Shown piece after piece: positions 2,237 to 4,198 of a stretch of DNA of 64,000 bases (its first letter is position 1; every line of letters starts with the position of its first letter). The stretch is from Stylophora pistillata. Lineage: Eukaryota. The stretch covers positions 1 through 64,000 of the forward strand of contig NW_019218373.1 of NCBI RefSeq assembly GCF_002571385.2, given 5' to 3'. The position numbers were made by a program, and so were the translations under genes. The notes beneath the pieces are model-generated. The model saw nothing but the letters and a program-made list of their open reading frames with translations, had not been told where the DNA came from and made no database searches.

Positions 2237-4198
2237 TTACGGATCGTTGGGGATCTTTAAACAATTGACCAGTTTTTTCTCCCAGTGGCTCTTTTCAACA
2301 ATTTTTTGATAGTCTATATAGCTTCTTTTTCGCAGCTCCTTAGGAAGTTTTCCTTTGTCGACGTCATCAAGTTTGATAACGACTAAACTATCATCTCTCA
2401 TTTCCATAAGTCGATGGAGGGCGTATTCCATTTCGGAAACACAATAATTGCTATTAAAAAAGTTCTTAGACACGACAGCTATTGTTTTCCTTGACTCGTA
2501 AACACTGTTAACCATATTTTCCNNNNNNNNNNNNNNNNNNNNNNNNNNNNNNNNNNNNNNNNNNNNNNNNNNNNNNNNNNNNNNNNNNNNNNNNNNNNNN
2601 NNNNNNNNNNNNNNNNNNNNNNNNNNNNNNNNNATGGACGTCTACTTTGTACGTTTGGCTAATGCAACCGAGTGGGTTTTTCACAGTACACGTGTATGCT
2701 CCTGTGTCAGACGGATACAGGTCCTTCAAACTTAACACGGTTGACCATTTACTTAAAGAGAGTTTCTTGCCACCTTTCCTTTCCTCAAACGATAATCCTT
2801 CTTTGTACCATGTCACGGTAGGACGGGGATATCCACTGACAGAACAGTCAAGCTTTACGGATTTGCCAGCGGGTACTGCAAGAAGGTTGTGTCTCGCCTT
2901 ACTTTGCGACTCCGTGAATTTTGGAGCAACTGTAAAGAATAGAGCAGCCACTGAATTTCAGTAAAGATCCCATCAACGCATCGATATACATACACCAACG
3001 CGAAAATTCCAGAATTCCGTACATTGACTTTTCCTCATAAAAGAGACCTTCAACATACACAAAGCTTTATGTTAGGTTACAGATGAAGTGCATTCTAAGC
3101 GTGATTTTATGGTAATGTTTGAGAGAAGACTGGTACAAGGAGAAGGTTTTTTCAGACAGTTACATCGGCGAAGTTGTTTGTTTTTTCCCTTCTAGTAATC
3201 CTCTAGATTTCTGGCGAATATCAATCATTTGACATACCTGCTGTTGTTAATTCAGTAATCAAAAGCTTTAGCTTTTTCTTGGTAACCAAAATGTTTCCTG
3301 GTAGACTTTCGATGTTGCTCATTATTCTCTGGAGATACCATATCTCAAGGGCGGATCGAGGACTTTCCAGGGAGGGAAAAGGGGTGGCTGTTACCAATCA
3401 ACTTTGAAAAGAATGACTGAGGGGACAGAATGTCTTCTCATTTTCTCTTAGTACCAGCCAGTAAGTTCTAACTGGAATGTGTTTTGACTGTATTGCTCAG
3501 TCTTCATCGCCACGTTCAAGTCAGTTTATTCCAAATTATATCTTCGGTACGTGAAATGAATATTTTTGCCTCTAAGTGAAGGTTTATTAATAACTGCGTG
3601 TAACATAACCTGCATCATTGCAATTTTGCTTTTCACGTATTAGTGTTTTAGTGTGTACTGGGTGTATTAAAGAAGGGGGAGCGGGGAGGGGTGGTAAGAC
3701 ACCCTAAACTCAAACATTCTCCACCTCTTGATCGACTCCTGAGATCCTAATAACTCGAAAGCAATCGCATCACTACCACCGAGGAGAGATTCCAGTATTC
3801 CTATTTTCACCTTGTAACTTTGTTTTCAACTCGTAACTGTTTTTACTATGGCTCGCTAATGAGGCGAGTTAATGTGCAAACAATGAAAACAGCATAAGAA
3901 GTTTACATACTTCCGATAACGAAGCGCAATGTATTTTTTCCGCAGTCGTTCACCGCAACACAGGTGTAGAGGCCAGCGTCTTCTTTCTCCACCCTTCTTA
4001 TTTTCAAGTATTTGTAGAGTTGGATCCTCATACGTCGTTGATTTGATGGAGTGAGCGGCTGATTGTCTTTGAGCCAGTAATACTGAAGTGTTGTGTTCTG
4101 ACCACTGGTTCTGATCTGGCAATTGAGTTTTACATACTTTCCAAAGTTCACCAGAACGATCTTCTCCTCGTTAACATTATTTTCACGGATGGAAGGAA
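2237..4198 (-). CDS. Ig-domain receptor with FGFR/FGFRL1-like ectodomain and C-terminal TIR domain (partial: 5' exons not identified, middle lost in N gap)
   Basis: Exon 4198-3911 (Ig: LNC..YYWLKD..DAGLYTC, phase 1/1), possible 60-nt linker exon 3297-3238, exon 2929-2634 (AVPAGKSVKLDC..GYPRPTVTWYK..DTGAYTC..TYKVDV, like FGFR D2). After gap 2523-2633 comes the TIR C-terminal half, 2522-2237 (ENMVNSVYESRKTIAVVSKNF..YCVSEMEYAL..LPKELRKRSYIDY..WEKKL). Joining Ig and TIR in one gene is inferred across the gap. Confidence 0.75.

What the first reader, a model, noticed from the sequence alone, without database searches (positions are those of the whole stretch)
2237..4198. FGFR-type ligand-binding ectodomain apparently wired to a TIR signalling domain
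Seen: the Ig exon at 2929-2634 (LAVPAGKSVKLDC..GYPRPTVTWYK..SKWSTVLSLKDLYPSDTGAYTC.V.N.LG.I..TYKVDV) sits upstream of a TIR C-terminal half on the same strand, with no kinase sequence visible. Knowledge: this Ig pattern is that of domain D2 of FGFRs/FGFRL1, the heparin/FGF-contacting domain, rather than IL-1R-type Ig. I recall, unverified, that a sea anemone FGFRL1-like protein has a TIR tail. Inference: this may be a hybrid receptor coupling growth-factor sensing to MyD88/NF-kB-type or NADase TIR output. The helix YCVSEMEYAL keeps the Glu at the position of the TIR NADase catalytic residue. Caveat: the 111-N gap is too short for Ig3, the transmembrane helix and the first half of TIR.
Basis: partly seen in the sequence, partly recalled or inferred. 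Interest (0 to 1): 0.75.

Follow-up and report, generated by a model that had tools for sequence, protein, structure and literature searches.

The report
Coral FGFR-like Ig receptor with TIR tail
This is an expressed coral gene, cut by an assembly gap, from a multi-copy family of surface receptors whose outside resembles the FGF receptor and whose inside is a Toll-like-receptor signalling domain, a family already known under the name "IL-1R-like".

Summary
On the minus strand lie a signal-peptide exon (7201-7114), two I-set Ig exons (4198-3911, 2929-2634), the N gap (2523-2633) and the last 94 codons of a TIR domain (2521-2240, stop 2239-2237). RNA contigs splice exon 1 to Ig1 and Ig1 to Ig2, and run 211-250 nt past 2634 into sequence the assembly lacks. 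The Ig2 exon is specifically FGFR-D2-like (68-69 bits on D2-only PDB chains, against about 26-30 bits per domain for titin and Robo).

No read links Ig2 to the TIR. Ungapped paralogues in the same genome give the full plan: SP-Ig1-Ig2-Ig3 (FGFR D3-like)-TM-TIR, one exon each. The nine best of 42 genomic TIR matches all have such Ig exons upstream on the same strand. The gap therefore hides Ig3, the TM exon and the first part of the TIR exon, about 2.4 kb in the most compact paralogue.

The TIR is TLR1/2/6-type, not IL-1R-type. FGF binding and NADase activity remain unsupported. This domain plan is already published for cnidarians as "IL-1R-like" (Ig+TIR). I found no paper noting the FGFR homology. 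New member of a known kind; moderate interest.

The parts
7114..7201 (-). Exon 1: ATG at 7201 and 29 codons plus 1 nt encoding a hydrophobic signal-peptide-like N-terminus; GT donor at 7113-7112; phase 1
   Evidence: A joint 4198<->7114 (skips 2915, CT..AC on the plus strand = GT..AG on the minus strand) is seen in 1 RNA contig of run X1, depth 23.6, shorter side only 27 nt. Frame and splice sites were checked. The signal peptide is read by eye, not predicted by a tool.
4199..7113 (-). Intron 1, holding interspersed repeats (5085-5222, about 6160-6590) and a small N run (5223-5244)
3911..4198 (-). Ig1 exon (I-set, 95 full codons), phase 1 at both ends; its best FGFR1 stretch falls in the D1 region of that chain
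   Evidence: Pfam Ig_3 1.4e-13 and I-set 2.4e-13. PDB 8jqi_B FGFR1: query 14-93 aligns to chain 43-115. RNA depth 26 in X1.
2930..3910 (-). Intron 2 (981 nt, GT..AG)
   Evidence: Joint 2929<->3911 in 1 contig of X1 (depth 17, side 91) and 1 contig of X4 (depth 11, side 138); absent from X3 and X21.
2634..2929 (-). Ig2 exon, FGFR D2-like, 98 full codons; the assembly breaks 1 nt before the expected donor
   Evidence: RNA contigs X4 record 18 (645 nt) and X3 record 11 (486 nt) end their laid part at 2634 and carry 211 and 250 further nt that lie nowhere in 1501-7500.
2523..2633 (.). Assembly gap (111 N). By analogy with the paralogues it replaces the Ig3 exon, the TM exon, three introns and about 150 nt of the TIR exon, which span 2,465 nt in L031
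   Evidence: The letters were not sought.
2237..2522 (-). 3' part of the TIR exon: 1 nt, then 94 codons (TLR2-like alphaB/betaC to the C-terminus), then a TAA stop at 2239-2237
   Evidence: dN/dS against 14 paralogues is 0.06-0.21. RNA depth is 26-28 in X1 and 31-34 in X4. In X21 only first mates on the plus strand cover it, which fits minus-strand RNA in most stranded libraries.
1756..2236 (-). 3' UTR; a polyadenylation-type hexamer lies at about 1780
   Evidence: RNA contigs lie on 1756-2105 (X1) and 2076-2486 (X4). Hexamer found. The exact transcript end cannot be read from contigs.

Best explanation
The locus is one expressed member of a coral multigene family of single-pass receptors. The family plan is signal peptide, three Ig domains collinear with FGFR D1-D2-D3, a transmembrane helix and a cytoplasmic TIR domain of the TLR1/2/6/10 type. 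Each module is one exon and all introns are in phase 1. In this assembly a scaffold gap, written as 111 N but really some kilobases, has swallowed the Ig3 exon, the TM exon and the first third of the TIR exon. Inferred, not shown: a ligand bound by the variable ectodomain brings two receptors together, their TIR domains pair, and they recruit MyD88 to drive NF-kB/MAPK signalling as TLRs do. The ligand is more likely a variable or non-self (microbe or symbiont) molecule than a conserved FGF.
For: Exons, phases and splice sites were read directly. The RNA joints exon1-Ig1 and Ig1-Ig2 are present, Ig and TIR exons have comparable depth, and transcripts continue beyond 2634. Ig2 is FGFR D2-like, and the Ig1 exon's best FGFR1 stretch lies in that chain's D1 region (query 14-93 to chain 43-115). 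Paralogue L031 has no N between Ig2 and TIR and carries Ig1, Ig2, Ig3, TM and TIR exons with AG/GT borders. Its Ig3 hits FGFR3/4/1/2 D3 best, with a 39-bit D3 stretch and 57 bits for the whole chain, including the HxQWL motif. Its TIR scores 79 bits on TLR2 against 28 bits or less on IL-1R-family chains and 26 on MyD88. A second, deeply diverged lineage (L036) is also FGFR-like in D2 (72-73 bits on D2-only chains) and D3. The 9 best of 42 TIR matches in the genome each have an FGFR-like D2 and/or D3 exon upstream on the same strand within about 10 kb; the other 33 have none on the same contig. Selection is purifying on the window's own pieces: TIR half dN/dS 0.06-0.21; Ig1 and Ig2 0.32-0.41 against L031 and L035, and 0.79 for Ig2 against L032. 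dS to L035 and L031 is of the same order for the Ig exons (0.55-0.72) and the TIR half (0.36-0.49), with L035 nearer for Ig2 and the TIR half and only marginally for Ig1. The Ig+TIR plan is published for anthozoans.
Against: No read or contig joins Ig2 to the TIR half. The TIR half sits on a 2.5-kb terminal piece of the scaffold, and the scaffolder's gap estimate (111) is far below what one gene would need. Raw-read run X21 covers the TIR/UTR at about 1x but shows nothing on the Ig exons, though that is too few reads to weigh. The exon 1 joint rests on one contig with a 27-nt side. The TIR exon has a history partly separate from the Ig exons: for L031 against L036, TIR dS is 0.28 while Ig dS is saturated. 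Similar dS is therefore only weak evidence for linkage. In 3 of the 10 paralogue TIR exons that I aligned out of the 42 matches the BB loop reads RDFxPG, but Leu (6) or Val (1) replaces the Pro in the other 7. MyD88 coupling is therefore not assured, and the window's own BB loop lies in the gap. Related TIR loci from other corals in metagenome contigs (28 loci, 41-67% identity) showed no Ig exon upstream. The FGFR-like ectodomain was thus demonstrated in this genome only.
Confidence: 0.72

Rival explanations
1. Scaffold misjoin. The pieces left and right of the gap come from two different members of the same family, so the window holds the 5' part of one Ig-TIR gene and the 3' end of another.
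For: The assembly is fragmentary, with 5 N runs in the window and many in the paralogous loci. The family has at least 9 similar loci, which invites mis-scaffolding. The TIR piece is a 2.5-kb scaffold end. The gap estimate of 111 does not fit one gene. The closest TIR paralogue (C611:142275, 89%) and the closest Ig2 paralogue (C611:160226, 68%) are different loci.
Against: Order, strand and spacing match every intact paralogue. RNA depth of the two sides is similar in X1 (20-26 against 26-28). dS to L035 and L031 ranks the same way for Ig2 and for the TIR half. Even if this rival is true, each piece still belongs to an FGFR-like-Ig/TIR gene, so the architecture stands.
Confidence: 0.17
2. One reading: the ectodomain binds FGF (with heparan sulfate) and the TIR converts growth-factor sensing into NF-kB signalling or NAD+ cleavage.
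For: D2 and D3, the FGF/heparin-contacting domains of FGFRs (established knowledge), are the two domains with specific FGFR similarity. The Glu at the position of the TIR NADase catalytic residue (position recalled, not tested) is invariant in the 10 paralogue TIR exons that I aligned out of the 42 matches, and is present in the window.
Against: Ectodomains are only 28-64% identical between members whose TIRs are 82-86% identical. Ig dN/dS is 0.26-0.79, and the two lineages are saturated in dS. This is not what a receptor for conserved ligands should show. No acid-box exon lies between Ig1 and Ig2. The same Glu stands in TLR2, and TLR TIRs are scaffolds, not NADases (recalled). FGF-contact residues were not examined.
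Confidence: 0.07
3. The gap really is short and the gene is a deletion derivative or pseudogene in which the end of Ig2 abuts the middle of the TIR exon.
For: The scaffolder's estimate of 111 bases. Family members with in-frame stops exist elsewhere, for example the D2/D3 matches with TAG or TGA on C611 and C179.
Against: Spliced RNA contigs go on for 211 and 250 nt past 2634 with letters that lie nowhere on 1501-7500, and no 2634-to-2522 joint is reported. Both pieces are under purifying selection. As written, the two frames differ (positions 2927 and 2521 are 406 nt apart, remainder 1), although the N count is only an estimate.
Confidence: 0.03

Closest known systems
Cnidarian 'IL-1R-like' (Ig-TM-TIR) receptors: NvIL-1R1-3 of Nematostella, five in Acropora digitifera, 1-7 in sea anemones, many in Porites lobata
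   Same: Same domain plan: extracellular Ig domains, one TM helix, C-terminal TIR. These genes are multi-copy and tandemly duplicated in corals, and their TIR is not of the vertebrate IL-1R type. Passages read in PMC1896004, PMC5094078, PMC10236652 and PMC4083563.
   Different: Those papers define the class by Pfam domains only. None of the passages I read says that the Ig domains are FGFR-type. I could not compare sequences with the published proteins, because a full-length query needs joined exons, which was left out.
FGFR1-4 ectodomain
   Same: D2 and D3 give FGFR chains as the best full-domain matches in the PDB, and D1 aligns to FGFR1 D1, so the order is collinear. The D2/D3 exon border falls just before the Glu that follows the VDV/LDV strand.
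   Different: There is no tyrosine kinase (the stop codon follows the TIR) and no acid-box exon between D1 and D2. D3 is a single exon here, whereas vertebrate FGFR D3 is split into IIIa plus IIIb/c (recalled).
FGFRL1 (FGFR5)
   Same: Three FGFR-type Ig domains, a TM helix and no kinase. It has one exon per Ig domain, six exons, and phase 1 introns in human and Nematostella (PMC2754479, passages read).
   Different: [quoted passage not shown] Here TM and TIR are separate exons and the tail is a TIR. No FGFRL1 chain was seen in the PDB lists, so FGFR and FGFRL1 affinity could not be told apart.
TLR1/2/6/10 TIR domains
   Same: These are the best PDB matches of the full paralogue TIR (59-79 bits over almost the whole domain) and of the window's half (38 bits to TLR2), including the ...CxxE... 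helix.
   Different: The ectodomain is Ig, not LRR. The BB-loop Pro is replaced by Leu or Val in 7 of the 10 paralogue TIR exons that I aligned.
Vertebrate IL-1R family (IL-1R1, IL-1RAcP, IL-18R, SIGIRR, IL1RAPL)
   Same: Ig ectodomain plus TIR in one chain.
   Different: The TIR scores only 21-28 bits on these chains, against 79 on TLR2. No IL-1R-family chain is among the best 60 for Ig2. IL1RAPL1 reaches only 22-24 bits for the L036 D3. The shared plan is therefore most likely convergent, as the cited papers already suspected.
NADase TIRs (SARM1, plant TNL TIRs, bacterial TIRs)
   Same: A Glu stands at the aligned helix position (correspondence to the catalytic Glu is recalled).
   Different: Plant TIR chains match only at E 0.05-0.9, and no activity data exist. 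Receptor-type TIRs with this Glu are not known NADases (recalled).

Membership tests
Cnidarian IL-1R-like (Ig-TM-TIR) receptors | At least one extracellular Ig domain | tested here: met
   Two I-set exons in the window; three in paralogues L031 and L036.
Cnidarian IL-1R-like (Ig-TM-TIR) receptors | C-terminal TIR domain in the same protein | tested here: inconclusive
   A TIR C-terminal half lies on the same strand behind the gap and is transcribed, but no read links it to the Ig exons. The feature is met in ungapped paralogue L031.
Cnidarian IL-1R-like (Ig-TM-TIR) receptors | Single transmembrane helix between Ig and TIR | not testable with these tools
   For the window it would lie in the N gap. 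The paralogues have a separate exon with a hydrophobic stretch of about 23 residues followed by basic residues, read by eye without a TM predictor.
FGFR (receptor tyrosine kinase) | D2 and D3 Ig domains of FGFR type | tested here: met
   D2: 68-69 bits on D2-only chains. D3 of the paralogues: FGFR3/4/1/2 are best, with alignments over the whole domain. No phylogeny with outgroups was made.
FGFR (receptor tyrosine kinase) | Cytoplasmic split tyrosine kinase | tested here: not met
   The reading frame ends after the TIR. None of 144 PF07714 matches lies on C588, C611, C179 or C41, with 133 of 1820 candidates scored.
FGFR (receptor tyrosine kinase) | Acid box between D1 and D2 | tested here: not met
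   RNA joins Ig1 directly to Ig2, and the linker residues are not acidic.
FGFRL1 | Three FGFR-type Ig domains, a TM helix and a short tail without a known domain | tested here: not met
   The tail is a TIR domain. The gene structure differs from that described in PMC2754479.
Vertebrate IL-1R family | IL-1R-type TIR and Ig domains by sequence | tested here: not met
   The TIR scores 21-28 bits on IL-1R-family chains against 79 on TLR2. No IL-1R chain is in the best 60 for Ig2.
TIR NADases | Catalytic Glu | tested here: met
   A Glu aligns with the Glu of TLR2 WCKYEL and is invariant in the 10 paralogue TIR exons that I aligned. That this is the catalytic position is recalled, and the residue is not sufficient for activity.
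TIR NADases | NAD+ cleavage activity | not testable with these tools
   Needs an enzyme assay.

The most novel reading that the evidence does not exclude
The cnidarian 'IL-1R-like' receptors, or at least this coral clade of them, are chimeras made by exon shuffling between an FGFR/FGFRL1-type D1-D3 ectodomain and a TLR-type TIR exon. The TIR exon is kept nearly uniform by gene conversion across ectodomain lineages that have diverged to saturation. Some members may still bind FGF- or heparan-sulfate-type ligands, giving a direct growth-factor or glycan to NF-kB wiring unknown in bilaterians.
Probability: 0.15. Interest if true: 0.7.

Novelty: new member of a known kind. Interest (0 to 1): 0.4.

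Why it matters
The class is known, so the gene itself is ordinary. Three things go beyond the passages I read. First, the Ig ectodomain of these coral 'IL-1R-like' receptors is collinear with, and specifically similar to, FGFR D1-D3, while the TIR is TLR-like. The name 'IL-1R-like' therefore misleads about both halves and about likely ligands. Second, the TIR exon evolves in concert across ectodomain lineages that are saturated in synonymous changes, pointing to one shared signalling output for many recognition modules. Third, the FGFR-like ectodomain marks exactly the nine best TIR matches of this genome. If confirmed in other cnidarians, this gives a concrete origin for an orphan receptor family (phase-1 exon shuffling) and suggests candidate ligands to test.

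Tried and rejected
**Searches that gave nothing useful**

- The search of protein representatives with the Ig2 exon was wasted. The 150 listed hits are giant multi-Ig proteins of 870-7754 aa whose many domains add up, so nothing about relatives' architecture could be read from it.
- The protein-atlas search with Ig2 returned only generic I-set clusters.
- The metagenome scan with the TIR profile found 28 loci from other organisms (41-67% identity).
  - tblastn with ten Ig/TM/TIR exon peptides found no Ig exon in any of the 28.
  - A motif scan of the 9 loci with the longest upstream flank (about 4-10 kb) found none.
  - Reading the open frames of two loci (L038, L040) showed only TM-like exons.
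  - Cross-species presence of the FGFR-like ectodomain therefore stays untested.
- I looked for the genome's canonical, kinase-linked FGFR to build a tree. PF07714 and the D3 exon shared no contig, so no tree with FGFR, FGFRL1 and IL-1R outgroups was made.
- Rfam on 1-9000 gave 0 matches.

**Literature**

- Five searches combining TIR or IL-1R-like with FGFR or FGFRL1 returned nothing relevant.
- One search was badly framed and useless.
- Poole & Weis 2014 (Dev Comp Immunol) is not held and was not seen.

**Left out under the rules**

As a result search for homologous proteins (length window 0.55-1.75x) and structure prediction of the ectodomain were not used.

**Rejected reading**

- IL-1R orthology.
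Full report
**What is in the sequence**

The window is AT-rich animal DNA (GC 0.32-0.43). RNA runs that hold the stretch are labelled 'coral metagenome' or carry a coded organism. On the minus strand I read four coding pieces:
- Exon 1, 7201-7114: an ATG, then 29 codons plus 1 nt, with a hydrophobic N-terminus.
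- Ig1, 4198-3911.
- Ig2, 2929-2634.
- After the N run 2523-2633, one base and 94 codons of a TIR domain, ending in TAA at 2239-2237.

All junctions are AG/GT and in phase 1. Pfam calls both Ig exons I-set/Ig_3 (E 1e-13 to 1e-16). It calls the last piece TIR_2/TIR, but only from profile position 43-49 onward, so it is a C-terminal half.

**Transcription (one read-laying run on 1501-7500, four runs)**

- Logan contigs of poly(A) RNA runs cover the TIR/3'UTR, Ig2 and Ig1 at similar depth: X1 gives 26-28, 20 and 26; X4 gives 31-34, 11 and 8.5.
- Intron 2 is empty in X1.
- The joint 2929<->3911 (GT..AG on the minus strand) is present in one contig each of X1 and X4, and in none of X3 or X21.
- The joint 4198<->7114 is present in one X1 contig, with a short side of only 27 nt.
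- In the raw-read run X21 only first mates on the plus strand cover 1901-2500, at about 1x. That fits a minus-strand RNA in most stranded libraries. X21 shows no reads on the Ig exons, but the numbers are too small to weigh.
- X4 record 18 (645 nt) lies on 4048-3911 and 2929-2634 and then carries 211 further nt. X3 record 11 carries 250 nt beyond 2634. These letters lie nowhere on 1501-7500, and no 2634-to-2522 joint is reported.
- The mRNA therefore goes on into sequence the assembly lacks. No contig links Ig2 with the TIR piece.

**The gap**

- Both edges cut coding sequence.
- Compared with paralogue L031, the Ig2 exon stops 1 nt before its GT donor.
- The TIR match to TLR2 starts at the first residue after the gap, aligned to position 52 of the TLR2 TIR construct.
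- About 50 residues of TIR are therefore missing at the least.

**What the Ig exons are**

- Against all PDB sequences, the whole-chain ranking for Ig2 is led by multi-Ig proteins whose domains add up.
- Per domain the picture is clear. D2-only chains of FGFR2 and FGFR4 score 68-69 bits over query residues 2-97 of 98. The best single domains of titin and Robo2 score 26-30 bits.
- No IL-1R-family chain is among the 60 shown of 255 hits.
- Ig1 has no such margin, but its best stretch on full-length FGFR1 falls at chain residues 43-115, which is D1.

**What the TIR is**

The window's half matches TLR2, TLR15, TLR6, TLR1 and TLR10 (E 1e-8 to 7e-5). MyD88 matches at E 0.05 only.

**The family in the same genome**

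- The TIR half finds 42 places in G000. The closest is 89% identical, so there is no near-identical second copy.
- Ig2 finds 26 places. The D3 exon of a paralogue finds 19.
- Each of the nine best TIR matches (78-100% identity; scaffolds C588, C611, C179, C41) has a D2-like and/or D3-like exon upstream on the same strand within about 10 kb. None of the other 33 has one on its contig. These lists are lower bounds.
- I fetched six paralogous stretches.
- L031 (C41:757500-767000) has no N between Ig2 and TIR. It shows Ig1 (294 nt), Ig2 (297), Ig3 (384), TM (138) and TIR (449 nt including the stop), each a single phase-1 exon with AG/GT borders.
- Its Ig3 gives FGFR3, FGFR4, FGFR1 and FGFR2 D3 as best hits, aligned over the whole domain including the HxQWL motif.
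- Its TIR scores 79 bits on TLR2, 73 on TLR1 and 70 on TLR6. It scores 21-28 on IL1RAPL2, IL-18RAP, IL-1RAcP, SIGIRR and IL1RAPL1, and 26 on MyD88.
- A second lineage, L036, is also FGFR-like in D2 (72-73 bits on D2-only chains) and in D3.
- From the Ig2 donor to the point equivalent to window 2521, L031 spans 2,465 nt. The 111 N are therefore an underestimate if the window holds one gene.
- No tyrosine-kinase match lies on any of the four scaffolds (133 of 1820 candidates scored).

**Evolutionary pattern**

| Comparison | Result |
|---|---|
| L031 exon peptides against paralogues, protein identity | TIR 82-86%, Ig exons 28-64% |
| Window TIR half against 14 paralogues | dN/dS 0.06-0.21; dS 0.33-0.68 for the 11 closest, 1.4-2.9 for three distant ones |
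| Window Ig1 and Ig2 against L031 and L035 | dN/dS 0.32-0.41; dS 0.55-0.72 |
| Window Ig2 against L032 | dN/dS 0.79 |
| L031 against L036, three Ig exons | dS saturated; dN 0.64-0.78 |
| L031 against L036, TIR exon | dS 0.28 |

- Both halves of the window's gene are under purifying selection. The ectodomain changes two to four times faster than the TIR.
- The L031/L036 contrast means the TIR exon has been homogenised or exchanged between old ectodomain lineages.
- In line with this, the window's 3' flank aligns at 72% over about 730 nt to two C611 loci. The introns beside its Ig exons align to nothing beyond the exon edges.
- I aligned 10 of the 42 TIR matches, chosen by hand from the complete exons among the better-scoring loci. 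In these ten paralogue TIRs the Glu of the ...SEM/SEL... helix is invariant. The BB loop reads RDFxPG in 3, with Leu in 6 and Val in 1 in place of the Pro.

**Interpretation**

- The best reading is an expressed member of a family of SP-Ig1-Ig2-Ig3-TM-TIR receptors, with the middle lost in a scaffold gap.
- The chief rival is a misjoin between two members. It changes nothing about the architecture, because every near relative of either piece belongs to such a gene.
- Dimerisation-driven TIR signalling through MyD88 is an inference from the TLR-type TIR. I did not test for MyD88 in this genome. The papers cited report MyD88 in anthozoans (passages read).
- FGF binding is not excluded, but rapid diversification of the ectodomain, tandem arrays and the missing acid box speak for variable ligands.
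- The conserved Glu is shared with TLR2, so it cannot argue for NADase activity. That TLR TIRs are not NADases is recalled, not tested.

**Comparison with what is known**

- Ig-TM-TIR proteins of cnidarians are published as 'IL-1R-like'. There are three in Nematostella, with TIRs distinct from vertebrate IL-1R (PMC1896004, passages).
- Sea anemones have 1-7 complete copies. None is annotated as a bona fide IL-1R, and independent origin is suspected (PMC5094078, passages).
- Acropora has five (PMC4083563, passages).
- Porites lobata has 'a high number', and TIR-domain genes are tandemly duplicated in corals (PMC10236652, passages).
- The FGFRL1 survey PMC2754479 describes a Nematostella FGFRL1 with SP, three Ig and TM, six exons and phase-1 introns.
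- Searches combining TIR or IL-1R-like with FGFR or FGFRL1 found no relevant paper.
- Subscription papers, notably Poole & Weis 2014, and all supplements were out of reach.

**Other notes of this scan**

- Notes on the same genome name it Stylophora pistillata and describe other TIR receptors with FN3 ectodomains. I did not test them.
- They fit my observation that the more distant TIR matches, and the metagenome loci of other corals (28 loci), have a TM exon but no recognisable Ig exon upstream.
- Notes on 'FGFR' in this genome concern kinase-type FGFR paralogues and were not followed up.

**Verdict**

This is a new member of a known kind. The FGFR-type ectodomain and the concerted evolution of the TIR exon are modestly new descriptive points that need cross-species confirmation.

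The joined spliced model was deliberately not searched or folded. That is why relatives in other species could not be examined.

Noticed in passing
window 5085-5222 (and about 6160-6590), inside intron 1: A young, very high-copy interspersed repeat. The first look found 1407 candidate copies in the genome. The 40 scored gave 43 matches, nearly all full-length at 97-99% identity. RNA contig depth is 5x10^4 to 9x10^4 at 5101-5300 and about 2x10^4 at 6101-6500. Reads join opposite strands at 5138-5221. There is no Rfam match. The assembly breaks right behind it (N 5223-5244).
   Followed up: partly
L031 (G000:C41:757500-767000) against L036 (G000:C41:497000-505500): The TIR exon evolves in concert. 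It is 85% identical with dS 0.28 between two genes whose three Ig exons are 33-44% identical with saturated dS. This suggests gene conversion or exon exchange confined to the signalling end.
   Followed up: partly
G000:C611, about 30-165 kb (loci L034, L035): A dense array of FGFR-like Ig exons (D2-like at nine places, D3-like at eight) with only two TIR exons found. Several matches have in-frame stops, there are many N runs, and in L035 the exon order is irregular (Ig2, Ig3, Ig1, Ig3). This is either a birth-and-death array or a mis-assembly.
   Followed up: no
L038 and L040 (metagenome contigs Ga0126336_10000471 and Ga0126336_10000359): TIR exons 63-66% identical to the family, preceded by a TM-like exon but with no recognisable Ig exon in 8-10 kb upstream. 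They may be related TIR receptors with another or a very short ectodomain in other corals.
   Followed up: partly
L032 (G000:C179:414500-424000): A family member in which only an Ig2-like exon, a TM exon and the TIR exon were found, with no Ig1 or Ig3 match. The number of Ig domains seems to vary within the family.
   Followed up: no
window 21060-22775 (-) and 51865-52731 (-): Long open frames that look like retroelement proteins. The first carries a YVDD-type reverse-transcriptase motif. Read by eye only.
   Followed up: no
window 53814-55055 (-) and 61664-62338 (-): A single-exon 413-aa open frame with seven hydrophobic stretches and a DRY-like motif (GPCR-like), and a 224-aa open frame with a basic helix-loop-helix-like N-terminus. 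Read by eye only.
   Followed up: no
G000:C213:465487-465738 (-): A distant TIR match (33%) inside a 990-aa open frame without stops. It is possibly the single-exon canonical LRR-type TLR of this coral.
   Followed up: no
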